Virus record (IMG/VR): IMGVR_UViG_3300033984_000473
Location: 1 to 64,000 of that record
Direction: 5' to 3' (one strand)
DNA length: 64,000 nucleotides
The notes beneath the pieces were generated by a model. That model did not search any database and was not told the DNA's origin. It saw only the letters and a list, made by a program, of their open reading frames with translations. The position numbers were made by a program, and so were the translations under genes. Shown here piece by piece: positions 1,074-16,903 of the stretch (within the stretch, counting starts at the first letter, position 1; every line of letters begins with the position of its first letter).

Positions 1074-2061
1074 ATTCGATTTTAACGACATTTTAATTAA
1101 ACCAGCAGCTGTTTCATACATTGAAAGCAGACAAGACATTAACCCATTTTACGATGGGTTTTTACCTTTGATAACAGCACCAATGGATACAGTAATCGAT
1201 AATGAAAATGAAAACCTATTTACTAGGGCAAATATAGTAACGTGTTTACCTAGAGGTGAAAAAAATAACTCTAAAGGTTTTGAATCTTATTCTTTAGATG
1301 AAATCCATAATAAACTATTGCTCAATAGTTTGGACCCTAATGGTATGTATCTTATTGATATAGCCAATGGTCACATGGAAAAACTTTTAATCATGACCAG
1401 AGCAATCAAGGAAAGACACCCAAACTTAAAACTTATGGTTGGTAACGTTGCTAACCCAGAAACCTATGTTGATTTATCTAACGCTGGTGCTGATTATATT
1501 AGAATCGGTATCGGAAATGGTGGTGGTTGTAGTACAACAGTACATACAGGTGTTGGATATCCAATGGGTTCTCTAGTTAGAGAATGTTACTTAGCTTCAA
1601 AGTTGTTGGGAAAACCAGCTAAGATTGTTGCCGATGGTGGAATGCAAAACTATAGTGATATTATTAAAGCTTTGGCTTTGGGTGCTGATTTTGTAATGGT
1701 TGGAAGCCTTTTTAATAAAGCCATGGATTCATGTGGTGATAACTACCTATGGAAATTCATTAGAGTACCGCAAGGCCTAGCTGAGATAGCATATCAATGT
1801 AAAATACCAGTTTACAAAAAGTTTAGAGGTATGAGTACCAAAGAAGTACAAAAAAAGTGGGGCAAGATAACCTTGACAAGTTCGGAAGGTGTGATTAGAT
1901 TTAGAAGAGTTAAATATTCATTAAATCAATGGGTAAATAACTTTGAAGATTATCTTCGTTCATCAATGAGCTACTCTAACGCTAATAACTTAGAGGAATT
2001 TATAGGAAACGCAGAAACAATAAGAATAACAGATAACGCATTTAATAGATACAACAAATAA
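1063..2061 (+). CDS. GMP reductase / IMP dehydrogenase family protein without CBS domains
   Basis: FDFNDILIKP, TAPMDTV, IDIANGH, catalytic loop GIGNGGGCSTT, ADGG, KALALGADFVMVGS, flap RGMST…SEG (more GMPR-like). ATG 1063 preferred over TTG 1027. Confidence 0.88.
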   Translation: MINKFDFNDILIKPAAVSYIESRQDINPFYDGFLPLITAPMDTVIDNENENLFTRANIVTCLPRGEKNNSKGFESYSLDEIHNKLLLNSLDPNGMYLIDIANGHMEKLLIMTRAIKERHPNLKLMVGNVANPETYVDLSNAGADYIRIGIGNGGGCSTTVHTGVGYPMGSLVRECYLASKLLGKPAKIVADGGMQNYSDIIKALALGADFVMVGSLFNKAMDSCGDNYLWKFIRVPQGLAEIAYQCKIPVYKKFRGMSTKEVQKKWGKITLTSSEGVIRFRRVKYSLNQWVNNFEDYLRSSMSYSNANNLEEFIGNAETIRITDNAFNRYNK

Positions 2062-3710
2062 TGGTAACAGTAGTATATTGTACAAGAGAAACAAACCCAA
2101 CACACAAAGAACATTTGATTAAGAGCTCTGGGCTTCATAATAACATCGAGGTTATTGAAATAATCAATAATGGTGAATCACTAACCAAAGCATATAATCG
2201 TGGCTTAAAACAAGCTAAAAACGATATTGTCATATTTTGTCATGACGATTTAACCATTGAAACTAAACAATGGGGTTCTAAGCTGCTTAAACAGTTTCAA
2301 AAGAATCCAGAATATGGTATCATTGGCGTTGCTGGTAGTAAACACATGCCAGTATCTGGTCAATGGTGGGAAAAGAAAAACAAAATGTATGGTCGTGTAC
2401 AACATACTCACGAAGGTAAGTCTTGGTTATCAGCATATAGTGATGATTTAGGACAGGAATTAGAAGAAGTTGTAATCGTTGATGGTCTTTGGTTTGCGGT
2501 TGATAAGACTAAAATCAAAAAAGAATTTAATGAAAACGTTGAAGGCTTTCATTTCTATGATGTAACTTTTGCTTTTGAAAACTATTTGGAAGGTGTTAAG
2601 GTTGGTGTAACAACAGCAATCAGAATAAACCATCAATCTATCGGTATGACCAACGAAGCATGGGAGAAAAATAGAGCTGACTTTTCAGAAGCCTACCAAG
2701 CCCATTTACCAGCTGACATCAAAAGAGTTTTGCGTAAAAATGAAAAATTAAATGTTCTAATTGGTTGTCTTAGCTTTGCTAACTACACTGGTTCAGAGTT
2801 ATATGTTTTTGAGTTAGCTAAACAATTAATCAAACAAGGTTGTGATGTTAGCATTTGTTCAAACATAGGTCAACCATTAGCTTCAGCGGCAAACAAGTTA
2901 GGTATTAAGATGTACAACTTACAAGAACCGCCTGGTTTTAAATTAGGTGATGGTAAATGGTTATTAAAATCTCCAACTGGTGATGTTGTTTCACAAGAGA
3001 ACACACTTTATAATGTGATACCAACAAACTTTGATGTCATTCATATGAATCATAAGCCAGTTACAGAACATTTATTAAGGTTATACCCAAACACACCAAT
3101 CATCTGTTCAATCCATTCTGAAGTTATTCCTTTGGAAGAACCAGTAATATCACCTTTGATTAAAAAATACATAGCGATTAGACCAGAGATTAAAGATTAT
3201 ATTGTTGATACTTTTGGAATTACTGAAGAAAACGTTAGTGTTATCTACAATCCGATTGATTCTGAAAAATTCAAACCAGTTAATAACACTGAAAAACGAG
3301 ATAAAAAAAGAATTCTTTTTGTTGGAACTATCGATTACTTAAGACGTGAAACAATTCAAGACTTGGTGAATACGACCAGAGAAAATAATCAAGAATTATG
3401 GATTGTTGGTAAAAAGAATGACACTTATTTAGACGATATGATTAATGGACAAACCCATGTATCGTATTTTGAACCAACATCAAGTATTGAGAAATATATC
3501 CATCAATGTGATGAAACTGCTGGTATACTTTTAGGTAGAACAACAATTGAAGGTTGGTTATGTGGTAAAAAAGGTTGGATTTATAACGTAGATTCTACAG
3601 GTGTAATCAAATCAAAAGAACTACATGATATTCCAGTAGATGTTGATAAATTTAACGCTACAAATATTACCAAAACAATAATTGAAGAATACAAATTGAT
3701 ACTAGAATAA
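2061..3710 (+). CDS. Two-domain glycosyltransferase (GT-A/GT2-like N-terminus, GT-B/GT4-like C-terminus)
   Basis: SLTKAYNRG, IFCHDDL, VDGLWF, FHFYD; then TGSELYVFELAKQL, VIYNPID, ILFVG. Confidence 0.85.
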   Translation: MVTVVYCTRETNPTHKEHLIKSSGLHNNIEVIEIINNGESLTKAYNRGLKQAKNDIVIFCHDDLTIETKQWGSKLLKQFQKNPEYGIIGVAGSKHMPVSGQWWEKKNKMYGRVQHTHEGKSWLSAYSDDLGQELEEVVIVDGLWFAVDKTKIKKEFNENVEGFHFYDVTFAFENYLEGVKVGVTTAIRINHQSIGMTNEAWEKNRADFSEAYQAHLPADIKRVLRKNEKLNVLIGCLSFANYTGSELYVFELAKQLIKQGCDVSICSNIGQPLASAANKLGIKMYNLQEPPGFKLGDGKWLLKSPTGDVVSQENTLYNVIPTNFDVIHMNHKPVTEHLLRLYPNTPIICSIHSEVIPLEEPVISPLIKKYIAIRPEIKDYIVDTFGITEENVSVIYNPIDSEKFKPVNNTEKRDKKRILFVGTIDYLRRETIQDLVNTTRENNQELWIVGKKNDTYLDDMINGQTHVSYFEPTSSIEKYIHQCDETAGILLGRTTIEGWLCGKKGWIYNVDSTGVIKSKELHDIPVDVDKFNATNITKTIIEEYKLILE

Positions 3711-4663
3711 TGAGTAAGATACAAGAATGGTTTAATAGAAAACTTGCGATATTATCAATCGCTCTTAGCAATGTTGAAAAAGGTGCTTTGGCACAAACAG
3801 GTGAGTCTTTAGGTACTGGTATAAACCAAAACCAAAGGCTTTCACAAGGTAAATTATCGGATTCATTAGTGAATGGGGAAATTACCCAAGAAGTGCTTAA
3901 TTTAAAATGGCGAACATATAAAATATTAAGAGCTAGCGAAGGCTTAACAGCCGAGATAGTAGGGTATGATGCCGATGGTATGCCAATCACAAAGGTTAAA
4001 AAAAGAAATTCTAAAAAAGGGTTAAAAAAGGTTGTGTTAGATAATAACGATAATTTTCCTTTAGAAATGGTTGTTGATAATAGTGAAATATCTACTGGTA
4101 GCAATGATGCTATGGATAATGATTATATCAGTATCCTAGACGAAGTATCTTTTAACCTAGATGCCGATGGCGGTGTTCTTAGTGCAACACATGGTAGTAT
4201 TAAAAGTACTGAATATTTTGCAACAAATAAAAACGAAAAACCAATTGTTGTTGAAAGAGAGTACATACCAAATTTTAAGATAGAAGACTACACTACAAAA
4301 CTTAATGTTAGAAAAATTAATAAAAAACAAAGACTATTGGAATTTTGTGTAAGCATTTACGCAGACGAGTACAACAGAACTAGTAGGTTATTTTTAAGTG
4401 CTATTAAAAAAGCGATGGAGAATCCAAGTCAAGCCAATATGTTATCGATAGATAAAGTTAGCTTTGTAACTTATAAAACAATGGGTGCTTCAGATTATTT
4501 GGAATACGAATACGAAATAACTTCATTTGATAAAATAATCGAATTTAACGGAAACTATGTTATAAAGTTTATTGGAGATATAAGTATCGATGGTAAAGAT
4601 ATCTTAGAAGAACATAGAGTCGAATCGTTAGATAAGAAATATGAAAATAAAGAAAAAAAATAA
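3710..4663 (+). CDS. Hypothetical phage protein
   Basis: 317-aa ORF translationally coupled (TAATG) at both ends; no recognised motif. Confidence 0.75.
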   Translation: MSKIQEWFNRKLAILSIALSNVEKGALAQTGESLGTGINQNQRLSQGKLSDSLVNGEITQEVLNLKWRTYKILRASEGLTAEIVGYDADGMPITKVKKRNSKKGLKKVVLDNNDNFPLEMVVDNSEISTGSNDAMDNDYISILDEVSFNLDADGGVLSATHGSIKSTEYFATNKNEKPIVVEREYIPNFKIEDYTTKLNVRKINKKQRLLEFCVSIYADEYNRTSRLFLSAIKKAMENPSQANMLSIDKVSFVTYKTMGASDYLEYEYEITSFDKIIEFNGNYVIKFIGDISIDGKDILEEHRVESLDKKYENKEKK

Positions 4664-5298
4664 TGAGTGTTTTAAGTAATCATTTTGATAAGGTATATTG
4701 TGTAAACCTTAATAGACGAGCAGATAGATGGGAAAAAGTTTGTAAAGAATTTAACCGATTGGGTATTGATGAAGTTGAACGCTACGAAGCAATTGATGGG
4801 AAAGAATTTGACTGGTCAACAATCAAATTCAACCCTAGTTTGTTGGTTGGTGAATTAGGGTTGATTGAAACTCACATCAACTTAATCAAAGAAGCCAAAG
4901 AAAAAGGTTATAAAAGTGTTTTGATATTTGAAGATGATGTGTATTTTACATCTGAATTCGATAAATTAGATGAATACATGGCAGCGTTGCCGACAAATTG
5001 GGATATGATATACTTAGGTGGTAACCATAGCTATGGTCCAACACCTGTAAATGTTAATGATAAAATATTAAAATTAACCAAGACATATACAACACATTGT
5101 ATTGCTATAAAAGATACCTTATACGATACAATTATTGCAATGACCGAAGGTAGAAAAAAACAAATAGATGTTTACTACGCTGATTTACAAAACTTATATA
5201 ACGTCTATGGTTTTACACCGAATATGGCACTACAAACTATTGATTTTAGTGACATACAAAATCGACAAGTAAACTATAACAATTATTTTAAACAATGA
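4663..5298 (+). CDS. Glycosyltransferase family 25-like
   Basis: YCVNLNRRADRW, EAIDG, LIFEDDV, WDMIYLG. Confidence 0.88.
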   Translation: MSVLSNHFDKVYCVNLNRRADRWEKVCKEFNRLGIDEVERYEAIDGKEFDWSTIKFNPSLLVGELGLIETHINLIKEAKEKGYKSVLIFEDDVYFTSEFDKLDEYMAALPTNWDMIYLGGNHSYGPTPVNVNDKILKLTKTYTTHCIAIKDTLYDTIIAMTEGRKKQIDVYYADLQNLYNVYGFTPNMALQTIDFSDIQNRQVNYNNYFKQ

Positions 5299-6095
5299 TA
5301 TGTTGTAATTTAAAAGGTGGTCTAGGTAATATGTTATTTCAGATTGCTGCGGCCAAGTCAATGGCTGTTGATACAAACAACAAATGTTGTTTTCCAAATC
5401 TAAATAGTCATTTACATTATTTAGATTCTGATATGATGTACAATCCAGTTTTAAGACATAGTTCTGAATATATGAAACTTTTAAAAAACTTGGAAGTATG
5501 TGGAATTGTTGATTATGGGAATACCATTAAATTTCCTTTTGAATACGTTGAAGTTCAACTTTCAAAATATAACACCTACATTGATGGGTTCTTTCAAAGT
5601 GAAAAGTATTTTAAACACAATAGAAAAGAAGTTTTAGAGTTTTTAGATTTTAGTTTTATTTCTCAAGAATATATTGATGAAAAATATGGGTTCTTTAGGG
5701 GTAATCACACAACATCAATACACGTTAGGCGTGGTGACTATCTAAGACACCCAAACCACCACCCACCGCAAACATTAGAATACTATATGGAAGGTGTTGA
5801 AATGTTAAAAGATAAAACTGATTTATTTGTCATCTTTAGTGATGATATTGAATGGTGTAAAGTAAACCTAGATTTAGATAATGCGGTTTACATTGAAAAC
5901 GAAAAAGATTATATTGAACTATATTTGATGAAAATTTGTAACAACAACATCACCTGTAATTCATCGTTTGGCTGGTGGGGAGCTTGGTTAAATGAAAATT
6001 CAGATAAGATAGTTATCGGACCCAAGATATGGTTCGGTTCAGCAATACAACATAACACAGGGGATATAATACCCGAAGATTGGATTAAAATTTAA
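5295..6095 (+). CDS. Alpha-1,2-fucosyltransferase (GT11 family)
   Basis: GGLGNMLFQ, DGFFQSEKYF, SIHVRRGDY, FSDDIEWC, NSSFGWWGAWL. Confidence 0.93.
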   Translation: MICCNLKGGLGNMLFQIAAAKSMAVDTNNKCCFPNLNSHLHYLDSDMMYNPVLRHSSEYMKLLKNLEVCGIVDYGNTIKFPFEYVEVQLSKYNTYIDGFFQSEKYFKHNRKEVLEFLDFSFISQEYIDEKYGFFRGNHTTSIHVRRGDYLRHPNHHPPQTLEYYMEGVEMLKDKTDLFVIFSDDIEWCKVNLDLDNAVYIENEKDYIELYLMKICNNNITCNSSFGWWGAWLNENSDKIVIGPKIWFGSAIQHNTGDIIPEDWIKI

Positions 6096-6096
6096 T

Positions 6097-6519
6097 ATGG
6101 AAAAAATTTACTCAAAAGTAGAAGAAGGAAAACTATTACACATAATCAATAGACTTAGCGAAATAGAAGGTAGAACCGAAGCGGTTCCAGAAGATAATTT
6201 CATTCAATGTGCTACATTGAAAATGGAAAAAGGAAAAACATTCCCACCACACAAACACATAACAAAAGATAGACACTATCCAGAACAAATAGCTCAAGAA
6301 TCATGGGTTGTAATCAAAGGAAGTGTTAAGTGTATCTTTTACGATATTGATGACACAATCATCGCCACTCCAACCTTAGAAGCTGGCGATGCTAGCTTTA
6401 CACTTTATGGTGGTCATACCTATGAAATATTAGAAGACGATACTATTGTTTATGAATATAAAACTGGACCTTATGAAGGTCAAAAACTGGACAAAACATT
6501 TATTAGCAATGACAAATAG
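6097..6519 (+). CDS. Cupin-fold protein (WbuC/sugar isomerase-like)
   Basis: PPHKH…QESWVVIKG…GGHTYEILED…EYKTGPY cupin pattern inside a sugar cluster. Confidence 0.75.
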   Translation: MEKIYSKVEEGKLLHIINRLSEIEGRTEAVPEDNFIQCATLKMEKGKTFPPHKHITKDRHYPEQIAQESWVVIKGSVKCIFYDIDDTIIATPTLEAGDASFTLYGGHTYEILEDDTIVYEYKTGPYEGQKLDKTFISNDK

Positions 6520-7111
6520 TGATGGGATAACAAAATGGTTTAGAGATAACGGTGATTATACTCATAATATAACCTATAGTTTAACTGAGGATTCGGTTAT
6601 AATGGATTTAGGTGGGTATACAGGTGTTTGGGCTCAACAGATGATTGACAAATATAACCCAAATGTTTATATCTTAGAACCAGTGGTTAAATTTCATGAT
6701 GGTATGGTTTCAAAATTTAAAAATAACTCCAAAGTACGTTTATTAAACGTTGGTGTTGGAACCGAAGATAAAGATGGTTTTATCTTTATAAGTGGTGATG
6801 CTACGTCATCTAATCTAGCCAATGGTGAATCAATTAGTGTTAAGTTTAATACGATTGATACAATATTAGAAAAATGGGGTTTAAATGAAGTTGATTTGAT
6901 TCAAATTAACATTGAAGGTGATGAATATCCGTTATTAGAACACATGATATCAACTGGTTCTATAAACAAATTTAAAAACATACAAGTTCAATTTCATTTA
7001 GGTATTGAAAACGATGTCGATAGACGAAATAAAATTCAAGAAGGTTTTATGGCCAATGGATTCAAAAATAATTTTGATTACCCATTTGTTTGGGAATCAT
7101 GGGGTAAATAA
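6509..7111 (+). CDS. FkbM-family SAM-dependent methyltransferase
   Basis: MDLGGYTG, ILEPV, DLIQINIEGDEY, QVQFH; ATG 6509 overlaps the upstream stop region. Confidence 0.85.
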   Translation: MTNSDGITKWFRDNGDYTHNITYSLTEDSVIMDLGGYTGVWAQQMIDKYNPNVYILEPVVKFHDGMVSKFKNNSKVRLLNVGVGTEDKDGFIFISGDATSSNLANGESISVKFNTIDTILEKWGLNEVDLIQINIEGDEYPLLEHMISTGSINKFKNIQVQFHLGIENDVDRRNKIQEGFMANGFKNNFDYPFVWESWGK

Positions 7112-7119
7112 TATTAATT

Positions 7120-7980
7120 ATGAAAGTTTTATTTAATTACGCAGATTTAAAGTTTTATAACTCACAAAAATTAAATACGGAAACTGGTTTAAGTATTGGT
7201 GGTTTTGATAAAGTATTTGACTTTAAAAAAGAAGATATAACCCAAGAGTTTTATCTGAAATATAAGAACATCCTAGACCAACCTAGAGGTGCTGGTTATT
7301 GGTTATGGAAATTTCATTTTGCTACGAGATTGTTAAATGACGAATCAATACCAGAAGATAGTTATATTTTCTACGCAGACTCTGGTTCAAAGTTTATTGG
7401 TTCTATTGATGAATTAATAAGCGTTTTTGAAAGAGATAATCTTTCGGTTATGACATTCAGACAAAACCATTTAAGTTATGTTTGGACCAAAAGAGATGCT
7501 TTTATTTTAACCGATACTGACTCACCAGAATATACACATACTGGTGCTAGGGTTGGTGGTTGGTTTTTATTAAAGAAGAATGATTTTAGTCGAGAATTTA
7601 TGGGTAAATGCCTTGAATATGGCTGCGACCATAGAATTATAACGGATTCACCCAACGAATTAGGTGTTCCAAATTATAATGGTTTTATTGAGAACCGTCA
7701 TGACGAAACAGTAATTACACTAGTTAGTAAAAAATATGGGTTATTTCCGTATCGAAACCCATCACAATGGGGTTATACTGGTGACGTTAACTTTACAGAC
7801 AATATGTATGGTGAAGAAGCCACTAAAAAAATGGTTGAGAAATTCGGAGAACTGTCAACATGGGGAAATAAATATGGTAACTATTTCCATGGCGAATCGT
7901 TAAATCAATACCCTCATTTTGAAATTGACGACAAATCCACCTACCCAACAATAATGGATTTACATAAAAGCCCACAATAA
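7120..7980 (+). CDS. Putative glycosyltransferase-like protein
   Basis: RGAGYWLWK, FYADSG, WTKRD, ENRHDET pattern suggests a GT-A-like protein; cluster context. Confidence 0.55.
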   Translation: MKVLFNYADLKFYNSQKLNTETGLSIGGFDKVFDFKKEDITQEFYLKYKNILDQPRGAGYWLWKFHFATRLLNDESIPEDSYIFYADSGSKFIGSIDELISVFERDNLSVMTFRQNHLSYVWTKRDAFILTDTDSPEYTHTGARVGGWFLLKKNDFSREFMGKCLEYGCDHRIITDSPNELGVPNYNGFIENRHDETVITLVSKKYGLFPYRNPSQWGYTGDVNFTDNMYGEEATKKMVEKFGELSTWGNKYGNYFHGESLNQYPHFEIDDKSTYPTIMDLHKSPQ

Positions 7981-7983
7981 TAT

Positions 7984-9819: not shown

Positions 9820-10627
9820 AGCAAAAATTAATATGATAGGCGGTGGCTTCCAGCACAGCGTGTCAACCAATGATATGAACCCAAGGTTAATCGAATGGGT
9901 AAAAGATGGTTCGGCACCAATATCGATTCACATTGATAACGGACTTCACATACCAATAAATCCAAACACTAAAAATTATGGTTGGTTGTGTGAATCAAAA
10001 ACTATTATTTCATCACATTATGTGTGGTGTCAAAGAAACATTGAAACTTTAAAAAACAATTTTATTAAAGTTTTCACACATGATGTTGAGTTAGCCAGCT
10101 TATCAGATATATTCCAACTAACACAATGTAGTGCCAAATCATATTTTGCTCATGGTGAAATGTATCCAAAAACAAAACTGGTATCAATGATTGCATCAAA
10201 TAAAACTATGTGTTCTGAACACGTTTACAGACAAGAAATGATTCAAAAGTACTCAAGTAAATGTGACCACTTTGGTCGAGGATACAGACAAATAGCGAAC
10301 AAAGAAGACGGGTTGAAAGATTATTGTTTCTCTATTGTAATGGAAAACGCTACATACGCAAATATGTTTACTGAAAAGATAACCGATTGTTTGATGACTG
10401 GAACAATACCAATTTATTACGGTATTTCAAATATTGGTGATTATTTTGATATTGATGGTATAATAACGTTAGATGATAACTTTAAGATTGAAGACTTATC
10501 TTTTGAATTATATGAATCAAAAATTGAATCAGTTAAAAAAAATCTACAATTAGCTATTGATTTATTGGTTGCAGAAGATTATATTTATGAGAACTTTATT
10601 GAAATCGATAACAAAATAAATAAATAA
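9812..10627 (+). CDS. Glycosyltransferase family 10 (alpha-1,3-fucosyltransferase)-like
   Basis: VSMIASN, YCFSIVMEN, TEKITDCLMTGTIPIYYG resembles the GT10 fucosyltransferase motif. Confidence 0.78.
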   Translation: MDRAKINMIGGGFQHSVSTNDMNPRLIEWVKDGSAPISIHIDNGLHIPINPNTKNYGWLCESKTIISSHYVWCQRNIETLKNNFIKVFTHDVELASLSDIFQLTQCSAKSYFAHGEMYPKTKLVSMIASNKTMCSEHVYRQEMIQKYSSKCDHFGRGYRQIANKEDGLKDYCFSIVMENATYANMFTEKITDCLMTGTIPIYYGISNIGDYFDIDGIITLDDNFKIEDLSFELYESKIESVKKNLQLAIDLLVAEDYIYENFIEIDNKINK

Positions 10628-10633
10628 AAAAAT

Positions 10634-11236
10634 ATGTCATTTGAAATTATTACTGAATTTGAAAAATCAATAGCTGAATTTTTTGGCTCACCCTATGCTG
10701 TGGCAGTAGATAGCTGCACACATGGTATTGAATTATGTTTAAGATATACCAAAGAAACAAAAATAAGTGTACCCAAAAGAACCTATTTGTCAGTACCATT
10801 TTTAGCTGAAAAAATGAATTTAGAAAGAGAATGGCGAGATGAAGAATGGGAAGACTATTATACGCTTAACTATGGCGATAAAAGAATAATAGACGCTGCT
10901 GTTCTTTGGAAAAAAGATAGCTACATACCAAACACTTTTATGTGTCTTAGTTTTCAATATCAAAAACACCTTTCGTTAGGTAGAGGTGGTATTATTTTAT
11001 TAGATAATGAAGAAGACTTTATCACACTTAAAAAAATGTCTTATGATGGAAGATTACCAAATATACCATGGAGAGAACAAAATATCAACACTGTTGGTTT
11101 TCATTATTATATGACACCAGAAACCGCAAAGTTAGGTTTAGAAAAATTAAAATTAGCTATTGAAACTGCACCTAAAAAATGGTTGGTTACCGATTGGCCA
11201 GATTTAACAAAAATGGAAATTTTTAATAAAAAATAA
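10634..11236 (+). CDS. Compact DegT/DnrJ/EryC1/StrS PLP-dependent sugar aminotransferase
   Basis: FEKSIAEFFG…AVAVDSCTHG, IDAA, SFQYQKHL..GRGG, GFHYYM; only 200 aa. Confidence 0.82.
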   Translation: MSFEIITEFEKSIAEFFGSPYAVAVDSCTHGIELCLRYTKETKISVPKRTYLSVPFLAEKMNLEREWRDEEWEDYYTLNYGDKRIIDAAVLWKKDSYIPNTFMCLSFQYQKHLSLGRGGIILLDNEEDFITLKKMSYDGRLPNIPWREQNINTVGFHYYMTPETAKLGLEKLKLAIETAPKKWLVTDWPDLTKMEIFNKK

Positions 11237-11253
11237 AAAATAAAAAAAGAAAC

Positions 11254-12225
11254 ATGAAAAAAGCATTTATCACAGGAATCAACGGACAAGATGGTTCATA
11301 TTTAGCCGAATACTTATTAGAATTAGGTTATGAAGTACATGGAATTATAAGAAGAAATTCTAGCGTTGAATCTCAGCAAAGTAGATTTTCTGATGAAGTT
11401 AGAAATAAAGTTAACATTCATTATGGTGACTTATTAGACCAAGGTGGTTTAGAAAAATTACTAGACCAAATCCAACCAGATGAAATTTATAACCTAGCTG
11501 CTCAAAGCCATGTAAGGATTAGCTTTGATATTCCACAATTTACGGTACAAACAAACGCAATAGGTATTCTAAATATTCTCGAAGCGTACAGACGTGCATG
11601 CCCAACAGCTAGATTCTACCAAGCTAGTTCTTCAGAAATGTTTGGTAACTCGGTAGATGCCGATGGATTCCAAAGAGAAACAACGCAAATGACACCAGTT
11701 AGCCCTTACGGATGTTCTAAGGTATTTGGATATAACATTACTAGAAACTATCGTAATGCTTATAAATTACACACATGTAATGGAATCCTATTCAACCATG
11801 AATCACCAAGAAGAGCTTCAAATTTTGTAACCAACAAAGTTGTTAAGACCGCTGTTGAAATCAAATTAGGTTTAACAGATAAATTGGTTCTAGGCAATAT
11901 GGATTCATACAGAGATTGGGGCCATTCTAAGGACTATGTTAAAGCTATGCACCTAATTATTAACCATGATACCCCAGATGATTTTGTTGTGTCTACAATG
12001 ACCACACATTCAGTTAGAGAAATGGTTGAATATGTGTTTAAAAAATTAGACTTAGATTACACACAATATGTTTCACAAGATGCCAAATTTCTTAGAGCTG
12101 AAGAATTAAAATATTTGAAAGGTGACTCAACTAAAATTAGAGAAACATTAGGTTGGAAACCAGAATACACGTTTGAAACCTTGATGGATGATATGATTGA
12201 GGGTTGGTTAGAAAAATTAACATAA
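11254..12225 (+). CDS. gmd: GDP-mannose 4,6-dehydratase
   Basis: ITGINGQDGSYLAEYLL, YNLAAQSHV, QASSSEMFG, SPYGCSK, LFNHESPRR, RDWGH. Confidence 0.97.
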   Translation: MKKAFITGINGQDGSYLAEYLLELGYEVHGIIRRNSSVESQQSRFSDEVRNKVNIHYGDLLDQGGLEKLLDQIQPDEIYNLAAQSHVRISFDIPQFTVQTNAIGILNILEAYRRACPTARFYQASSSEMFGNSVDADGFQRETTQMTPVSPYGCSKVFGYNITRNYRNAYKLHTCNGILFNHESPRRASNFVTNKVVKTAVEIKLGLTDKLVLGNMDSYRDWGHSKDYVKAMHLIINHDTPDDFVVSTMTTHSVREMVEYVFKKLDLDYTQYVSQDAKFLRAEELKYLKGDSTKIRETLGWKPEYTFETLMDDMIEGWLEKLT

Positions 12226-12234
12226 AATAATTAA

Positions 12235-12262
12235 AATATCCTAGCGTTTGCGTTAGGATATT
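12235..12262 (+). terminator. Stem-loop after gmd; its 3' arm contains the ATATTTAT promoter motif of phoH
   Basis: AATATCCTAGCG-TTTG-CGTTAGGATATT inverted repeat. Confidence 0.5.
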
Positions 12263-12266
12263 TATA
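12257..12266 (+). promoter_or_regulatory. Putative phage late promoter (GATATTTATA)
   Basis: Motif recurs on the sense strand upstream of about 20 genes in the window. Confidence 0.6.
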
Positions 12267-12290
12267 TTTATAATAAAACCTATTAAGCCT

Positions 12291-13148
12291 ATGCCTAGAA
12301 AAGTTTCAACCACGACAAAAACTCCAGCTGTAAGAACACCTAGAGTTAAGAAAGAAACTACGGCTGCCACATCGCAGCAAAAACCAAGTGTTGATTTATT
12401 ATCCTTGATTAAAATCGACCTAAAGCATAAAAACGAAGTACAAAAAAAATTGACACAAGCCATTAAAACTGGTGATGTAACAATTTGTACGGGACCAGCT
12501 GGAACTGGTAAAACACTTCTTAGTGTTGCCGAAGCTTTGCTACTTTTGAAAGCTCATCCAGACAAATATCATGAAATAAAATTAGTAAAATCTATTGTTC
12601 AACTTAAAGACGAAGATTTAGGAACGTTGCCTGGTGATGAAAAAGATAAATTGAAATTTATCATGATGTCATTCTTTGATGCTTTCTATAAATTAATCGG
12701 TGAAGAAACAACAAACAGATTACTAGATGCTGGCTATATCAAAATGGAAGTATTTGGTTCTATTCGTGGTAGGTCTTTATCTAACTGTATTATTTTATTT
12801 GATGAGTTCCAAAACGTTACCGATAACAATGGTAAAACACTTTTAACTAGGTTTTCTGAAAATACTAAAGTTATCGCTTTGGGTGATAGCAACCAAGTAG
12901 ATTTAAAAACACCAGAAAGTAGTTGTTTATTTGAGTTGGTTCGTATGGCTAAGTTACACCCAGAAGAAGGTGTAAATGTTGTCGAATTTACTGAAGATGA
13001 AGTTGTTAGACATAGACTTACAAAATACTTTATTCAAATCTTTGAACATAAAGACTACAAGAAAAAACCAAATATCGATAGGGTTAAAAAAATAGAACCG
13101 ATTATCAAAAAATCTTTTTTTACTAGATTTTTAGAATTATTTAGCTAA
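12291..13148 (+). CDS. phoH: PhoH-like ATPase
   Basis: GPAGTGKT, LGTLPG, RGRSL, DEFQN, LGDSNQVDL, VVRH. Confidence 0.93.
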   Translation: MPRKVSTTTKTPAVRTPRVKKETTAATSQQKPSVDLLSLIKIDLKHKNEVQKKLTQAIKTGDVTICTGPAGTGKTLLSVAEALLLLKAHPDKYHEIKLVKSIVQLKDEDLGTLPGDEKDKLKFIMMSFFDAFYKLIGEETTNRLLDAGYIKMEVFGSIRGRSLSNCIILFDEFQNVTDNNGKTLLTRFSENTKVIALGDSNQVDLKTPESSCLFELVRMAKLHPEEGVNVVEFTEDEVVRHRLTKYFIQIFEHKDYKKKPNIDRVKKIEPIIKKSFFTRFLELFS

Positions 13149-13198
13149 AAATCTAATTTTTACTTTACTTATTCGAAATTAATCGTTAGATTGGTGTC

Positions 13199-13801
13199 AT
13201 GAAAATAGGAATAAGTATTAACGAGGTTTTACGAGATTTTATTGGTCAATTGGCTTACACTTACGATAAATATATCGGGGAAACTGATATCACTGAAGGA
13301 GATGTAACCAATTTTAATTTAATTGAGTTCTTTAAGTTTGATGACATCAACAAACTTAACACGTTTCTTTATTTAGAAGCCCCTCTAGAGATTTTCGGCC
13401 ATGCCGACCAGATGTCAGATGGTTTGATGAACCATTTCAATAACTTCATCATGGATATGAATGACGATGGCGACCACGAGATTGAACTTGTAAGTCGTGA
13501 AATCGATAAAAGCATCCCATCAACTTACTTCTTTTTATCTAAAACTAGTTGCAGAATCGATAAGGTTAGATTCGTCAAACAATACCCACAAGAATGGGAT
13601 GGTGTTGACGTACTTATTACTGCCAACCCTTTTGCTTTAGAAAACAAACCTTCTGGTAAAATTAGTGTTAAGGTAAAAGCATCTTACAATACTGATACAC
13701 CAGCTGATTATGAAATTGACTCTATACTAGATTTCATTAACGATGAAGAATTAAGAACTAGAATATTAACAACAACCATAACAACTTACGAAGAAATTTA
13801 A
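13199..13801 (+). CDS. HAD/5'(3')-deoxyribonucleotidase-like protein with a degenerate motif I
   Basis: MKIGISINEVLRDF (cf. GIDIDGVL.D), C-terminal YN; first Asp absent. Confidence 0.5.
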   Translation: MKIGISINEVLRDFIGQLAYTYDKYIGETDITEGDVTNFNLIEFFKFDDINKLNTFLYLEAPLEIFGHADQMSDGLMNHFNNFIMDMNDDGDHEIELVSREIDKSIPSTYFFLSKTSCRIDKVRFVKQYPQEWDGVDVLITANPFALENKPSGKISVKVKASYNTDTPADYEIDSILDFINDEELRTRILTTTITTYEEI

Positions 13802-13806
13802 AAATT

Positions 13807-14166
13807 ATGATAGCATTCGGTGGAACAGTCTATGTATTAGACATGGACAAATTAACAAAAGCTGTATCAAGTGATGATACAAATGCATCTTCAGAAACTG
13901 TTGATACTGTAACTAAGGTTTACTTAGATGCCAATGGTGCCGAAAGTGCAAGTGAAGTTTTAAGCACTGTACGTGAAAGAGGTAGAGAAATTGACAGTAT
14001 AAAATATGATTTAATGCGAACACTAATTGAAGTCTTATTAGATGGAAATGAAGAAGCGGATGAATCGTTAGGTGTTGACAGAGCTTTAGACTCTGCTCCG
14101 CTATCATTTAAAATAGCCTTTAATACTTTACTTCAGTATGGTATTTTAAAAGAAATAGAAGAATAA
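13807..14166 (+). CDS. Hypothetical protein
   Basis: 119-aa ORF in operon. Confidence 0.7.
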   Translation: MIAFGGTVYVLDMDKLTKAVSSDDTNASSETVDTVTKVYLDANGAESASEVLSTVRERGREIDSIKYDLMRTLIEVLLDGNEEADESLGVDRALDSAPLSFKIAFNTLLQYGILKEIEE

Positions 14167-14189
14167 TAACCCAAAAACAAAAAAACAAA

Positions 14190-15338
14190 ATGGAAGAACA
14201 AAAAAACCAACTTGACGAACAAATTAAACAAGTTACGTCTGTTATCGAAAATTTAGAGAAGAAAGATTTTACTCTATATTTTTTCACATTGGATACGAAA
14301 GGTAATCCAACAGCTGGAATTGCTAATATCTACGAACATGTTAAAGTACTTAACGAATTAGGGTATAGAGCAACAATCCTTCACGAAAAAAACGAATATA
14401 AAATCAAAGGTGATGAAAACGGAAACGGTGCTGCCGATTGGTTAGGTGATGAATACGCTTTATTACCACACATCTCAATCGAAGCTCAAACCCTTAATAT
14501 CGGACCAGCTGATTTTATTATCATCCCAGAGATTTTCTCTAATATTATGGACCAAGTAAAAGGATTCCCATGTAAAAAAATTGTATTATCACAAAGCTAT
14601 GATTATCTATTGGAATTATTACCAATTGGTAAAAGATGGAACACAGATTATGGTTTCCACGATGTAATCACAACTAGCGAAAAACAAGCAACATATTTGA
14701 GAAATTTATTCCCATCTATCAACACTCACATCGTACCAGTAGCTATTCCAAGTTATTTTAAAGATAGTGACAAACCTAAAACACCAATCGTTGCAGTGCA
14801 TACTAGAAATTCTGGTGATGCCGCTAAGATTGCTAAATCATTCTATTTACAGTATCCAGTTTATAAATGGATTACGTTCAAAGAATTAAGAGGATTGTCT
14901 AGACCAGACTTTGCAACTCAATTAGGTAAAGCATGTGTCGCTGTTTGGATTGATGATACCGCTGGATTCGGAACATTCCCATTAGAAGCTATTGAGTCAA
15001 ATACAGCAGTTATCGGTAAAATGCCAAATCTTATTCCAGAATGGATGGAAACATCAGATGAAGAAGGAAACATGGTCATAAAAAATAACGGTGTTTGGAC
15101 TAACACCACGATGAATATCCCAGAATTAATCGCTACTTACTTAAAAGTATGGTTAGAAGATGCGGTTCCTTCAGATTTAACAGAAGGTATCAAAGCAAGT
15201 CAAGGATTATATACTTCTGAAAAACAACGTGAAGCTATGACTAATGTTTACGGTGGTTTATTAACAAATAGAATTGCAGAACTTAATAACACTTTAGATA
15301 CTTTAGAAAAATCTAAACTAACAACTAACGCTCAATAA
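14190..15338 (+). CDS. GT-B fold glycosyltransferase-like protein
   Basis: AGIANIYEHVKVLNELGY, DFIIIPE, GFGTFPLEA (GT4-like signature). Confidence 0.7.
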   Translation: MEEQKNQLDEQIKQVTSVIENLEKKDFTLYFFTLDTKGNPTAGIANIYEHVKVLNELGYRATILHEKNEYKIKGDENGNGAADWLGDEYALLPHISIEAQTLNIGPADFIIIPEIFSNIMDQVKGFPCKKIVLSQSYDYLLELLPIGKRWNTDYGFHDVITTSEKQATYLRNLFPSINTHIVPVAIPSYFKDSDKPKTPIVAVHTRNSGDAAKIAKSFYLQYPVYKWITFKELRGLSRPDFATQLGKACVAVWIDDTAGFGTFPLEAIESNTAVIGKMPNLIPEWMETSDEEGNMVIKNNGVWTNTTMNIPELIATYLKVWLEDAVPSDLTEGIKASQGLYTSEKQREAMTNVYGGLLTNRIAELNNTLDTLEKSKLTTNAQ

Positions 15339-15349
15339 AAAAACACAAA

Positions 15350-16147
15350 ATGGAAAAAACAAATATTTCAGTAATACTTCCAGTTCATGAATTGAACGAA
15401 GTAACAAAACCAATGTTCGATAACGCTGTAACCAGTATCAAAGAACAATCAGTAAGACCAGATGCTTTAATCATCGTTGTACCTAAAGGTAGTGAAGTTG
15501 CAAATTACATCAAAGGTTTAGATTTTGGTGACTATAAAGATTCAATCACTATTGCTGAAAACGAAGGTGAGACAGATTTTGCTTCACAAATCAATTATGG
15601 TGTTTCTGTTACCAAAACAGAATGGTTCAGTATCTTAGAATTCGATGATGAATTTGCTAAGATTTGGATTAAAAATGCTGTTGAATACAAAAAAGCACAC
15701 GCTAACGTTGAATTGTTTATGCCAATCATTATCGATGTAGATGCAATTGGAAATTTTATAGGATTCACAAACGAAGCAGTTTGGGCCAATAGTTTCTCTG
15801 ACGAATTAGGTATCTTAGACAACACAGCATTATTAGCTTATCAAAACTTTAATATTGATGGTATGGTAATTAAAAAATCAGTTTATGATGAATTTGGTGG
15901 GTTTAAACCTAGTATCAAATTAACATTCATTTATGAATTTTTACTACGTATGACATTCAAAGATGTTAAGGTTATGGTTATTCCTAGATTTGGATATAAA
16001 CATGTCAATCAAAGACAAGATTCATTGTTCTCAAACTACAAAGAAACACTTAACCCTGTAGAGGCTAGATGGTGGTTAGCAACAGCAAAAAGAGAATACT
16101 ATTTTCCAAATGATAGAAAAATAACGTATGAATCACAGAATGCGTAA
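15350..16147 (+). CDS. Glycosyltransferase family 2-like
   Basis: ISVILPVH, QINYGV, ILEFDDE, GGF, YEFLLR. Confidence 0.8.
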   Translation: MEKTNISVILPVHELNEVTKPMFDNAVTSIKEQSVRPDALIIVVPKGSEVANYIKGLDFGDYKDSITIAENEGETDFASQINYGVSVTKTEWFSILEFDDEFAKIWIKNAVEYKKAHANVELFMPIIIDVDAIGNFIGFTNEAVWANSFSDELGILDNTALLAYQNFNIDGMVIKKSVYDEFGGFKPSIKLTFIYEFLLRMTFKDVKVMVIPRFGYKHVNQRQDSLFSNYKETLNPVEARWWLATAKREYYFPNDRKITYESQNA

Positions 16148-16876: not shown

Positions 16877-16903
16877 AAAAATTGTAATAAAACCTTATCA
16901 ATA

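What the first reader, a model, noticed from the sequence alone, without database searches (positions are those of the whole stretch)
2061..16147. Phage-encoded glycan pathway of about 14 genes centred on GDP-deoxysugars
Seen: at least six glycosyltransferase-like genes (GT2+GT4 fusion, GT25, GT11, GT10-like, GT-B, GT2) plus Gmd, a DegT aminotransferase, acetyltransferase, FkbM methyltransferase, cupin and two SGNH proteins, mostly translationally coupled. Known: the Gmd product leads to GDP-fucose (with Fcl, not seen here) or to GDP-perosamine (with a DegT-type enzyme, then N-acylation). No flippase or polymerase is visible. Inference: the glycan is built in the cytoplasm on a phage substrate (virion proteins or DNA) rather than exported as O-antigen. 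Two fucosyltransferase families together suggest a branched, decorated glycan.
Basis: partly seen in the sequence, partly recalled or inferred. Interest (0 to 1): 0.7.

Follow-up and report, generated by a model that had tools for sequence, protein, structure and literature searches.

The report
Jumbo-phage glycan cassette without export genes
An uncultured freshwater jumbo phage carries a real, tightly packed set of about 14 soluble sugar-building genes in a spot where its relatives carry different sugar genes, but the sequence cannot say whether the sugar ends up on the phage particle or on the host cell surface.

Summary
Window 2061-16147 encodes 19 same-strand ORFs, and 14 of them have glycan-related assignments. 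These are a GT2+GT4 fusion, GT25, GT11, a probable GT-A, GT10-like, a GT-B, GT2, Gmd, an LbH acetyltransferase, FkbM, a cupin, two SGNH paralogues and a DegT-like protein.

- The "DegT" is a conserved 200-aa mini-form, not a normal aminotransferase.
- The cupin and SGNH calls rest on weak evidence.
- PhoH and three proteins of unknown function interrupt the set.

The window is the start of a 233-kb IMG/VR contig (64% complete). It belongs to an uncultured lake jumbo-phage clade with complete genomes of 345-363 kb and T4-like morphogenesis genes.

Across relatives, three glycosyltransferase genes are clade-core. The genes between them form a hypervariable cassette. A complete relative carries UDP-GlcNAc-epimerase chemistry there instead of Gmd.

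No cluster protein has a membrane helix. No ORF in this contig or in the complete relative has more than 4 predicted helices, so no Wzx/Wzy/WaaL/WecA-type protein is encoded.

Cytoplasmic assembly is supported, but the acceptor is unresolved: virion protein about 0.4, host envelope via host export about 0.35, DNA about 0.05.

Comparable GDP-fucose-centred clusters are already described in cyanomyoviruses, so this is a new member of a known kind.

The parts
2061..3710 (+). Clade-core fusion glycosyltransferase: GT2-like domain (residues 28-212) plus GT4 N-terminal domain (residues 243-402), 549 aa, no TM segment
   Evidence: Pfam. 44-82% identical copies in 19 IMG/VR loci. 61% identical in complete relative G003. 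No homologue in 50,697 GenBank phage records.
3710..4663 (+). Clade-specific 317-aa protein of unknown function. It sits between the core GT fusion and the cassette here, and on the far side of the cassette in G003. There is a weak hint of a tail-tube/Hcp/Dit-like C-terminal domain.
   Evidence: 404 homologues, no Pfam family. AF2 pLDDT 69. Best structural matches reach only Z 5-6 or E>0.01, but they are enriched in phage tube and baseplate proteins. One uncharacterised myovirus homologue in BFVD.
4663..5298 (+). GT25-family glycosyltransferase (LOS-type galactosyltransferase family), EDD at residue 90
   Evidence: Pfam 6.8e-12. Motif. Present in only some relatives.
5295..6095 (+). GT11-family (alpha-1,2-fucosyltransferase family) protein with HVRRGDY
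   Evidence: Pfam 4.8e-24. Motif at residue 143.
6097..6519 (+). 140-aa cupin-like protein; possible sugar keto-isomerase or epimerase (WbuC/QdtA-like)
   Evidence: Pfam E is only 0.17. Atlas: virus-only cupin clusters, with structural neighbours named QdtA-like and DUF6016/WbuC. 88-92% identical in L004, L007 and L020, where it occurs together with Gmd, mini-DegT and LbH.
6509..7111 (+). FkbM-family methyltransferase. The ORF could start at TTG 6446; ATG 6509 is more likely.
   Evidence: Pfam 5.7e-7. FkbM is one of the two commonest families in relatives' cassettes, 10 of 93 ORFs.
7120..7980 (+). 286-aa probable GT-A (nucleotide-diphospho-sugar transferase-like) protein of a virus-restricted family, DTD at residue 132
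   Evidence: No Pfam or PDB sequence hit. Atlas features score 0.98 to virus-only clusters and 0.93-0.96 to GT34, DUF1647, TOD1/MUCI70 and PF03407 clusters.
7984..8523 (+). Left-handed beta-helix (hexapeptide) acetyltransferase, NeuD/PglB/VioB-like
   Evidence: NCBIfam TIGR03570 1.4e-11; Pfam Hexapep.
8501..9187 (+). SGNH/GDSL-like protein 1 (GDSH at 6, DDIH at 208), cytoplasmic. It is a presence/absence polymorphism among close strains.
   Evidence: Pfam 4e-4, below the cut-off. Atlas. A contig about 94% identical in run X4 skips exactly 8490-9184.
9184..9819 (+). SGNH-like protein 2, a distant paralogue of SGNH1 (25% identity), GDSH at 8
   Evidence: tblastn self-comparison. Motif. No Pfam hit.
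9812..10627 (+). GT10-like (alpha-1,3/4-fucosyltransferase family) protein, 271 aa. Only the C-terminal nucleotide-sugar domain is recognisable.
   Evidence: Pfam 8.1e-9. ENATYANMFTEK motif.
10634..11236 (+). Mini-DegT: a 200-aa DegT/DnrJ/EryC1-like protein. It keeps the PLP lysine (K111), D87 and S106. It lacks about 40 residues of the large domain and the whole C-terminal domain.
   Evidence: Pfam 3e-14. Alignment to perosamine synthetase 3bn1. Thousands of ~200-aa homologues, the best 120 at 85-100% identity, on contigs up to 330 kb. Invariant residues. 476 clusters at 50% identity with E<=1e-10, mostly 190-260 aa.
11254..12225 (+). GDP-mannose 4,6-dehydratase (GINGQDG, S-S-E at 126, YGCSK at 152)
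   Evidence: Pfam 3e-116; TIGR01472 8e-117. Motifs. It is the only SDR in the contig. The nearest cellular homologue is 72% identical, in a Sediminibacterium MAG.
12234..12272 (+). Terminator-like hairpin (13-bp stem, 12234-12263) directly after Gmd. It overlaps two copies of the promoter-like motif ATATTTATA (12258-12272) ahead of PhoH.
12291..14166 (+). PhoH-like ATPase (12291-13148) and two clade-conserved unknowns (13199-13801 and 13807-14166). They are part of the conserved frame and have no evident glycan role.
   Evidence: Pfam PhoH 1e-49. No hits for the two unknowns. Synteny in relatives.
14190..15338 (+). Clade-core GT-B (GT4-like) glycosyltransferase, 382 aa
   Evidence: AF2 pLDDT 85, pTM 0.81. 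Foldseek top hits are 8xsg/8xsh (E 4e-14, TMq 0.63), then GtfA, SdgB, TarM, MshA and PimA. 2192 homologues, with the best 120 at 74-99% identity. None in GenBank phages.
15350..16147 (+). Clade-core GT2-family glycosyltransferase, 265 aa
   Evidence: Pfam 7e-7. Found in 21 related loci at 43-80% identity. 61% identical in G003.

Best explanation
The region is a cytoplasmic glycan-building system of an uncultured freshwater jumbo myovirus. It has two layers.

Layer 1 is a conserved frame of three glycosyltransferase genes that the clade shares: the GT2+GT4 fusion at 2061, the GT-B at 14190 and the GT2 at 15350.

Layer 2 is a hypervariable cassette, here 4663-12225, that differs from relative to relative.

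Inferred pathway in this phage:
- Host GDP-mannose is converted by Gmd to GDP-4-keto-6-deoxymannose.
- A co-inherited module (cupin, mini-DegT, LbH acetyltransferase) probably turns this into a GDP-acetamido-dideoxyhexose. Possible products are N-acetylperosamine, a 3-amino isomer, or an L-configured fucose analogue.
- GT25, GT11, the GT-A-like protein and GT10 extend and branch an oligosaccharide with 6-deoxyhexoses.
- FkbM adds O-methyl groups and the SGNH proteins add or remove O-acetyl groups.

Shown: the gene families, their motifs, solubility, absence of export genes, and the core-versus-variable pattern.

Inferred: the order of the steps, the sugar products, and the acceptor. My preferred acceptor is a phage-intrinsic one, namely virion proteins. 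The conserved frame would prime them and the cassette would supply a strain-specific outer glycan, as in chlorovirus capsid glycosylation.
For: - Families and motifs.
- Solubility: no cluster protein has a TM segment. No ORF has more than 4 predicted TM segments in the 233-kb contig or in the complete 345-kb relative G003. The same predictor finds an 11-TM protein in a bacterial polysaccharide locus.
- Frame versus cassette: the GT fusion, the GT-B and the GT2 are 61-66% identical in G003. That is as conserved as, or more conserved than, the neighbouring baseplate-region proteins (47-55%). The GT-B has 2192 homologues, most of the listed ones above 74% identity.
- Variability: the cassette differs in every relative examined. 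Across 93 ORFs from 9 loci it holds GT2, FkbM, GT11, GT10, GT25, NodZ, GT17, GT61, RmlC, an RfbH-like protein, HAD-nucleotidyltransferase fusions and a UDP-GlcNAc 2-epimerase.
- Module: cupin, LbH, mini-DegT and a high-identity Gmd (84-96%) occur together in the window, L004, L007 and L020. The first three are absent from L002, L005 and L019, whose Gmd is only 55-59% identical.
- Mosaicism: Gmd is 96% identical to L004 while the adjacent core fusion is 76%. A strain about 94% identical lacks exactly SGNH1.
- Virus-restricted families: three cassette proteins (the GT-A-like protein, the cupin and SGNH1) fall in clusters shared by tailed phages and giant viruses.
- Precedent: giant viruses use soluble virus-encoded transferases to glycosylate their capsid in the cytoplasm. 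Some have fucose on the capsid without encoding gmd/gmer (PMC5408694).
- Location: the GT-B and GT2 lie in a unit that runs into the sigma-like and baseplate genes. That unit is preceded by a promoter-like motif also found ahead of TerL and head genes.
Against: - No data show a glycan on any virion protein, and no acceptor is identified.
- GT25 in this cassette, and a weak WavE-like match (E 3e-4) in the G003 cassette, belong to LPS/LOS core families. Cyanophage clusters of similar content are conventionally read as cell-envelope genes (PMC9602691).
- The cassette is packed directly behind the dUTPase and GMP-reductase genes, which are nucleotide-metabolism genes. If it is transcribed with them it may be expressed early. 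Early expression also fits host-surface remodelling, although chlorovirus transferases are early too.
- No Fcl is encoded in the 233 kb held, so the donor for the GT10 and GT11 proteins is unknown.
- The mini-DegT lacks a whole domain and may not be an aminotransferase at all.
- The contig is only 64% complete.
Confidence: 0.4

Rival explanations
1. Host-envelope remodelling. The soluble phage transferases work at the inner face of the host membrane on host lipid-linked intermediates (lipid A-core, undecaprenyl-linked O-units or capsule units, or the Bacteroidota O-glycan precursor). The host's own flippase or ABC transporter and ligase export the altered glycan. The result would change the cell surface during infection, for superinfection exclusion, to stop progeny adsorbing to lysing cells, or to avoid grazers.
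For: - GT25, GT10 and GT11 in this cassette, and a weak WavE-like match (E 3e-4) in G003, are families typical of LPS/LOS and O-antigen synthesis.
- The nearest cellular Gmd (72%) sits in a polysaccharide locus of a freshwater Bacteroidota MAG. That locus has cupins, an LbH protein, a full-length DegT, GT4s and an 11-TM protein.
- A similar jumbo-phage lineage is predicted to infect Bacteroidota (PMC12619734).
- Cyanophage clusters with Gmd, Fcl and three fucosyltransferase families are interpreted this way (PMC9602691).
- Hypervariability is what one expects of loci that track host surface types.
- The lack of a phage flippase does not argue against this, because the host supplies one.
Against: - The three frame transferases are strongly conserved across a clade whose cassettes, and presumably hosts, differ. 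A host acceptor would have to be equally conserved.
- Several cassette proteins belong to virus-only families rather than being recent host acquisitions.
- The cassette's GC content (30-33%) equals that of the phage.
- No priming transferase is encoded.
- No experiment has demonstrated this role even for the cyanophage clusters.
Confidence: 0.35
2. DNA hypermodification. The transferases decorate a modified base in phage DNA with an oligosaccharide to evade restriction, as in T-even phages and in the more recently described phages with glycosylated 5hmC or 5-hydroxycytosine.
For: - Phage GT-B and GT-A enzymes are known to glycosylate DNA with diverse glycans (titles and abstracts of 10.1101/2023.12.21.572611 and PMC13326640).
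- dUTPase and ThyA genes are present in the window.
- The core GT-B has no cellular-type annotation.
Against: - There is only one ThyA-family gene per genome, and it has the uracil-specific PFNIASY motif of true thymidylate synthases.
- No Tet/JBP dioxygenase occurs in this contig or in the complete relative.
- Fucosyltransferase families, methylation and acetylation have no precedent on DNA.
- Short-read assemblies of the locus are clean and deep in several runs.
Confidence: 0.05
3. Another target. The glycan is put on host cytoplasmic proteins or small molecules as part of host take-over, or it is released on lysis as a soluble decoy. A further possibility is that part of the cassette (mini-DegT, SGNH2) is inactive baggage.
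For: - Everything is soluble and cytoplasmic.
- The best structural matches of the core GT-B include enzymes that glycosylate proteins (GtfA, SdgB) and small glucosides (AmGGT, PMC12159676).
- SGNH1 is dispensable in a close strain.
Against: - The mini-DegT is under strong purifying selection: 85-100% identity over the best 120 homologue clusters.
- A multi-enzyme branched and decorated glycan is an expensive way to modify an intracellular target.
- There is no precedent.
Confidence: 0.1

Closest known systems
Cell-envelope/'LPS' gene clusters of T4-like cyanomyoviruses, e.g. Synechococcus phage S-SCSM1 (PMC9602691)
   Same: - A large T4-like phage carrying Gmd.
- Several fucosyltransferase families (alpha-1,2-FucT, NodZ, POFUT-like) and about five further glycosyltransferases, clustered together.
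- Function inferred only, never demonstrated.
- The phage Gmd proteins are 47-48% identical to this one.
   Different: - S-SCSM1 also encodes GDP-L-fucose synthase and GDP-mannose 3,5-epimerase. This phage has neither. It has a mini-DegT, LbH and cupin module instead.
- The core transferases here have no homologue in any GenBank phage.
- The probable host is Bacteroidota, not a cyanobacterium.
Chlorovirus (PBCV-1) capsid glycosylation machinery (PMC5408694)
   Same: - Virus-encoded GMD and soluble transferases without TM or signal sequences.
- A methyltransferase domain that decorates deoxyhexoses.
- Cytoplasmic assembly of a fucose- and rhamnose-rich glycan on the major capsid protein.
- Strain-specific glycans.
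- Some strains have fucose without encoding gmd/gmer.
- Three cassette proteins here fall in Atlas clusters shared with Nucleocytoviricota.
   Different: - Eukaryotic host and an unrelated capsid lineage.
- Glycosylation is experimentally proven there, whereas nothing is proven here.
- No sequence-level orthology of the transferases was shown.
Mycobacteriophage virion glycosylation (Freeman et al. 2023, as cited in PMC12619734)
   Same: Phage-encoded transferases put glycans on capsid and tail-tube subunits of a tailed phage. This proves the concept for bacteriophages.
   Different: - The gene sets there are small and lie next to capsid and tail genes, and the host is an actinobacterium.
- No nucleotide-sugar pathway of this size is involved.
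- That paper could not be read here.
'Moraphages', a freshwater jumbo-phage lineage (PMC12619734)
   Same: - Freshwater, over 200 kb, with T4-like structural genes.
- Core dUTPase, PhoH, ClpA-like ATPase and sigma factor.
- Four core glycosyltransferase orthogroups.
- Variable genomic islands noted but not analysed.
- Bacteroidota hosts predicted.
   Different: - Reported genomes are 200-307 kb, whereas complete relatives of this phage are 345-363 kb.
- Membership was not tested because no moraphage sequence was available.
Bacterial Wzx/Wzy- or ABC-dependent O-antigen/capsule loci (example: Sediminibacterium MAG locus L129)
   Same: - Gmd, cupins, LbH acetyltransferase, a DegT-family enzyme, methyltransferase and several transferases in one co-oriented cluster.
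- Hypervariable between strains.
   Different: - The bacterial locus has an 11-TM protein and a full-length 368-aa DegT.
- The phage has no multi-TM protein anywhere and has a 200-aa DegT.

Membership tests
GDP-mannose 4,6-dehydratase (Gmd) | Full-length match to the family profile | tested here: met
   PF16363 3.1e-116 over positions 1-332 of 332. TIGR01472 8e-117, but 390 bits lies just under the equivalog cut-off of 415.
GDP-mannose 4,6-dehydratase (Gmd) | SDR cofactor motif GxxGxxG and the catalytic Ser/Thr-Glu and YxxxK | tested here: met
   GINGQDG at 8, SSE at 126, YGCSK at 152. The comparison with E. coli Gmd residues is from memory.
DegT/DnrJ/EryC1 sugar aminotransferase | PLP-binding lysine in the SF...K motif, and the Asp that binds the pyridine nitrogen | tested here: met
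   K111 aligns with the active-site lysine of perosamine synthetase 3bn1. D87, S106 and K111 are invariant across family members down to 35% identity.
DegT/DnrJ/EryC1 sugar aminotransferase | Two-domain architecture of about 360-400 aa (complete large domain plus C-terminal domain) | tested here: not met
   The protein has 200 aa. Residues 52-104 replace positions 89-181 of 3bn1, and the alignment ends near position 264-273 of 373. The short form is the norm in this family. I therefore do not file it as a standard DegT aminotransferase.
GT11 alpha-1,2-fucosyltransferase family | Profile match above threshold, plus the HxRRGDY donor-binding motif | tested here: met
   PF01531 85.6 bits against a cut-off of 23.9. 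HVRRGDY at 143. Donor and acceptor specificity cannot be tested here.
GT10 alpha-1,3/4-fucosyltransferase family | C-terminal catalytic domain with the EN...Y/F.TEK motif | tested here: met
   PF00852 35.8 bits against a cut-off of 23.9. ENATYANMFTEK at 178.
GT10 alpha-1,3/4-fucosyltransferase family | Recognisable N-terminal acceptor domain | tested here: inconclusive
   Only profile positions 3-119 of the C-terminal domain match. Residues 1-118 have no hit.
SGNH/GDSL hydrolase | Block I GDS(x) near the N-terminus, a C-terminal DxxH, and a profile match above threshold | tested here: inconclusive
   SGNH1 has GDSH at 6 and DDIH at 208, but PF13472 scores 21.2 bits against a cut-off of 32.9. 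SGNH2 has GDSH at 8, DTNCH (one extra residue) and no profile hit. Atlas neighbours carry Lipase_GDSL.
GT-B (GT4-like) glycosyltransferase, for the ORF at 14190 | Two Rossmann-like domains matching solved GT4 enzymes | tested here: met
   pLDDT 85. 467 PDB matches with E<=1e-3, all of the top 50 being GT-B enzymes, best 3.9e-14 with TMq 0.63. No sequence-profile hit.
Export-type surface-polysaccharide locus (Wzx/Wzy, ABC or synthase dependent) | Polyprenyl-phosphate priming transferase, flippase or ABC transporter, and polymerase or ligase (all multi-TM proteins) | tested here: not met
   No TM segment in any cluster protein. The maximum is 4 predicted TM segments in any ORF of the contig or of complete relative G003. 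The positive control found 11 TM segments in bacterial locus L129.
Seroconverting-phage Gtr/Oac modules | GtrA flippase, GtrB, and a membrane GtrC or Oac acyltransferase | tested here: not met
   No multi-TM proteins. The phage shows lytic T4-like architecture rather than that of a temperate phage.
Phage DNA-glycosylation system | An enzyme that makes the hydroxylated or hydroxymethylated base (dCMP hydroxymethylase, or 5mC methyltransferase plus TET) | tested here: not met
   Single ThyA with the uracil-type PFNIASY motif. No Tet_JBP. A dUMP hydroxymethylase activity of that ThyA cannot be excluded from sequence.
Virus-encoded virion glycosylation (chlorovirus/mycobacteriophage type) | Soluble virus-encoded transferases, with or without nucleotide-sugar enzymes | tested here: met
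Virus-encoded virion glycosylation (chlorovirus/mycobacteriophage type) | Glycan demonstrably attached to capsid or tail proteins | not testable with these tools
   This needs purified virions. The clade has no cultured member.

The most novel reading that the evidence does not exclude
A widespread clade of freshwater jumbo phages glycosylates its own virions through three conserved priming or extending transferases. It also swaps a hypervariable 'serotype cassette' among strains, so that phage particles have exchangeable glycan coats in the way bacteria have O-antigens. One building block would be made by a previously unrecognised 200-aa minimal DegT-type PLP enzyme family.
Probability: 0.3. 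Interest if true: 0.75.

Novelty: new member of a known kind. Interest (0 to 1): 0.5.

Why it matters
If the glycan coats the virion, tailed phages of Gram-negative hosts would join chloroviruses, mimiviruses and mycobacteriophages as viruses that build their own particle glycans. The cassette turnover seen here would then point to strong diversifying selection on phage surfaces, for example from grazers, host receptors or defence systems.

If the glycan instead remodels the host envelope, it is a large and fast-evolving superinfection-exclusion or camouflage system in an abundant lake phage.

In either case the clade gives a natural library of soluble fucosyltransferase-family, methyl- and acetyl-transferases. 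It also gives a compact DegT-like family whose activity is unknown.

The gene content itself is not surprising, because similar clusters are annotated in cyanomyoviruses.

Tried and rejected
- Megablast of the region against GenBank phages found no match.
- tblastn of the two core transferases against the same collection found no match. No cultured relative could be used.
- PDB sequence searches found nothing useful for the cupin, SGNH1, the 286-aa protein or the GT fusion.
- Fold searches for the 317-aa protein gave no significant match: Foldseek PDB E>=0.019, Atlas TM<=0.34, VIA-align Z<=6.2. BFVD gave only one uncharacterised homologue. The tail-tube resemblance stays a lead.
- Complex prediction of a mini-DegT dimer with PLP was not folded by the tool. 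It gives no evidence either way.
- Metatranscriptome libraries hold short contigs 96-99% identical to Gmd, the 200-aa unknown and the GT-B. DNA carry-over cannot be excluded and coverage is fragmentary, so expression is not shown.
- The T4 late-promoter consensus TATAAATA is enriched (25 against 13 expected), but it lies on the wrong strand relative to genes. Its complement, ATATTTATA, is the gene-proximal motif. In G003 that motif heads the whole gene array, so it does not give expression timing.
- The sigma-70 promoter scan was uninformative: 113 found against 105 expected.
- The upstream 344-aa gene was considered as a missing Fcl and rejected. It belongs to the GMP reductase/IMPDH family.
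- The idea that DegT is a recent pseudogene was rejected because the short form is strongly conserved.

Full report
**What the window is.** The window is the first 64 kb of a single 232,931-bp IMG/VR virus contig. The contig is linear, and CheckV estimates it 64% complete.

The window encodes a T4-like major head protein, portal and large terminase at 25-35 kb on the minus strand. It also encodes a gp5-like baseplate hub, dUTPase, an intein-containing ThyA and a ClpA/B-like ATPase. GC content is 33%.

The large terminase is at most 30% identical to any GenBank phage. The major head protein, by contrast, has at least 598 relatives in IMG/VR, the 80 kept at 54-88% identity. Among them are complete genomes of 345 and 363 kb.

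The sequence recurs in lake, river and wastewater metagenomes. The phage is therefore an abundant, uncultured freshwater jumbo myovirus.

A recently described freshwater lineage, the 'moraphages', has a very similar core: dUTPase, PhoH, ClpA, a sigma factor and four core glycosyltransferase orthogroups. Its predicted hosts are Bacteroidota (PMC12619734). I could not test whether this phage belongs to that lineage.

Profile searches confirm:
- a GT2-like plus GT4 fusion (2061-3710);
- GT25 (4663-5298);
- GT11 (5295-6095);
- an FkbM methyltransferase;
- a hexapeptide acetyltransferase of the NeuD/PglB/VioB type;
- a GT10 C-terminal domain (9812-10627);
- a DegT-family protein (10634-11236);
- Gmd (11254-12225);
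- a GT2 (15350-16147).

Signature motifs are intact: HVRRGDY in GT11, ENATYANMFTEK in GT10, and GINGQDG, SSE and YGCSK in Gmd.

The 382-aa ORF at 14190 has no profile hit. Its AlphaFold model (pLDDT 85) is nevertheless a clear GT-B/GT4 fold, with a best PDB match at E 4e-14.

The unassigned 286-aa ORF at 7120 looks like a virus-restricted GT-A family. That would bring the count to eight transferase domains in seven genes.

The cupin and the two SGNH proteins rest on weaker evidence: Atlas neighbours, motifs and one sub-threshold Pfam hit.

All junctions from 1027 to 12225 lie between -23 and +17 nt. A 13-bp-stem terminator-like hairpin follows Gmd directly.

**A correction on DegT.** The DegT-like protein has only 200 residues.
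- Compared with perosamine synthetase, it lacks about 40 residues of the large domain and the whole C-terminal domain.
- It keeps the Schiff-base lysine (K111), the aspartate (D87) and the SF...K and GG motifs.
- It is not a pseudogene. The best 120 homologue clusters are about 200 aa long and 85-100% identical, and they lie on contigs of up to 330 kb.
- An exhaustive search finds 476 clusters at 50% identity with E<=1e-10. Nearly all are 190-260 aa, and a few are domains of larger proteins.

I file it as a distinct mini-DegT family of untested activity, not as a standard aminotransferase.

**Frame and cassette.** Nineteen related loci, plus one complete relative, show one architecture.

The order in the window and its closer relatives is dUTPase, sometimes GMP reductase, the GT fusion, the 317-aa protein, a variable block, PhoH, two unknowns, the GT-B, the GT2 and then a sigma-like gene. 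The complete relative is G003 (345,454 bp, with terminal repeats). Its variable block instead lies between the GT fusion and the 317-aa protein.

The three frame transferases are 61-66% identical between the window and G003. That matches or exceeds the neighbouring baseplate-region proteins, at 47-55%. The GT-B has 2192 database homologues.

The block between them is different in every relative. A census of 93 ORFs from nine loci gives:
- GT2 in 10 ORFs and FkbM in 10;
- GT11 in 8, GT10 in 7 and GT25 in 6;
- Gmd in 5, plus further SDRs;
- DegT in 3, one of them full length;
- NodZ, GT17, GT61, RmlC and HAD hydrolases.

Individual loci add an RfbH-like dehydrase, an RmlD-GT2 fusion and a phosphomutase-nucleotidyltransferase fusion. 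G003 has no Gmd at all. It carries UDP-GlcNAc 2-epimerase, a HAD-nucleotidyltransferase fusion, FkbM and three other transferase-like genes.

So 'centred on GDP-deoxysugars' describes this genome, not the locus.

Exchange is recent and fine-grained. Gmd is 96% identical to L004 while the adjacent core fusion is 76% identical. A strain about 94% identical in another lake lacks exactly the SGNH1 gene. Fragments identical to the window's island occur in two further studies, which rules out a chimeric assembly.

**A co-inherited module.** The cupin, the LbH acetyltransferase, the mini-DegT and a high-identity Gmd (84-96%) occur together in the window, L004, L007 and L020. The first three are absent from L002, L005 and L019, whose Gmd is only 55-59% identical.

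The closest cellular Gmd (72%; all others are at most 55%) lies in a polysaccharide locus of a Sediminibacterium MAG, a freshwater Bacteroidota. That locus also has cupins, an LbH protein and a full-length DegT.

This supports, but does not prove, the following pathway: Gmd, then an optional cupin isomerase or epimerase, then transamination, then N-acetylation.

No Fcl, no other SDR and no nucleotidyltransferase is present in the 233 kb held. The donor for the GT10 and GT11 proteins could therefore be:
- host GDP-fucose, since some chloroviruses with fucosylated capsids also lack gmd/gmer (PMC5408694);
- a reductase activity of Gmd itself, as in PBCV-1 (same source);
- the module's own product.

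All three are inference.

**Where the glycan goes.** No protein of the cluster has a predicted membrane helix. No ORF in the contig or in the complete relative has more than four. The same predictor finds an 11-helix protein in the bacterial locus. Assembly in the cytoplasm without phage-encoded export is therefore well supported.

That alone does not identify the acceptor, because soluble transferases could act on host lipid-linked intermediates that the host then exports.

Points favouring a phage-intrinsic acceptor:
- the strong conservation of the three frame transferases across a clade with different cassettes;
- their position in a unit that runs into the sigma-like and baseplate genes;
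- the membership of three cassette proteins in virus-only families shared with giant viruses;
- the chlorovirus and mycobacteriophage precedents.

Points favouring host-envelope remodelling:
- the LPS/LOS-type families;
- the Bacteroidota link;
- the standard reading of the very similar cyanophage clusters (PMC9602691).

DNA is unlikely. The single ThyA is uracil-type, and no Tet/JBP enzyme exists in this contig or in the complete relative.

My estimates are 0.4 for virion protein, 0.35 for host envelope, 0.05 for DNA and 0.1 for other targets. The remainder is unassigned.

**Novelty.** Clusters that combine Gmd, several fucosyltransferase families and further transferases are already annotated in cultured cyanomyoviruses. 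Core glycosyltransferases and unexplored variable islands are noted for a similar freshwater jumbo lineage. As stated, the finding is therefore a new member of a known kind.

What this analysis adds:
- the frame-plus-cassette architecture and its turnover;
- the absence of export genes checked in a complete relative genome;
- the mini-DegT family.

No function has been demonstrated for any of these phage clusters, so the acceptor question is open and testable.

Noticed in passing
window 41387-43666 (-): The thymidylate synthase (ThyA family) is interrupted by an intein with a LAGLIDADG homing-endonuclease domain. The intein sits immediately before the catalytic cysteine (…VLPP | intein … HN | CH…). 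The exteins keep the uracil-type PFNIASY motif. The relative G003 has an uninterrupted 345-aa open frame for ThyA.
   Followed up: partly
window 12258-12272, 20478, 25013, 29046, 35146, 40593 and others; whole contig: The motif ATATTTATA occurs 38 times in the 233-kb contig. In 23 cases it lies within 60 nt upstream of a gene start on the same strand, including PhoH, TerL and head-region genes. It often follows a terminator-like hairpin directly. It is probably a clade-specific promoter element. In G003 it sits in the divergent region that heads the whole gene array.
   Followed up: partly
window 10634-11236 and homologues P0241-P0510: There is a large family of DegT-like proteins of about 200 aa. 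It has 476 clusters at 50% identity with E<=1e-10. They retain the PLP lysine but lack the C-terminal domain, and some are fused into 400-870-aa proteins. Their activity is unknown.
   Followed up: partly
window 1027-2061 (+): A GMP reductase/IMPDH-family gene lies directly upstream of the glycan genes and is present in only some relatives. In a phage with 33% GC it more plausibly shifts guanine nucleotides towards adenine nucleotides than serves GDP-sugar supply.
   Followed up: no
window 8490-9184, seen in run X4: A 9.9-kb contig about 94% identical, from another freshwater study, lacks exactly the SGNH1 gene. Twenty-six unrelated bases stand in its place. This is a single-gene presence/absence polymorphism inside the cassette.
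   Followed up: yes
L129 (Sediminibacterium MAG contig CAZTDV010000025.1, positions 3592-20539): A bacterial polysaccharide locus of 30.7% GC holds the closest cellular Gmd (72%). It also has three small cupins, an LbH protein, a full-length DegT, a C-methyltransferase, two GT4s and an 11-TM protein. It is a possible donor or recipient lineage and a hint at the host.
   Followed up: partly
window 45698-48229 (+) and 48252-49145 (+): An 843-aa ClpA/ClpB-like AAA+ ATPase (PHROG 4871, E 1.7e-257) is followed by a GNAT acetyltransferase. The ClpA-like gene is also a core gene of the moraphage lineage.
   Followed up: no
window 16148-16876 (+): A 242-aa protein with a weak Sigma70 region 2 match (3.7e-5) starts 1 nt after the core GT2 gene. 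It is conserved in 25 related loci and is probably a phage sigma factor.
   Followed up: no
L020 (IMGVR_UViG_3300040786_000030): In this relative, most genes of the locus align in several frame-shifted pieces. This suggests an error-rich (long-read) assembly rather than real pseudogenes.
   Followed up: no
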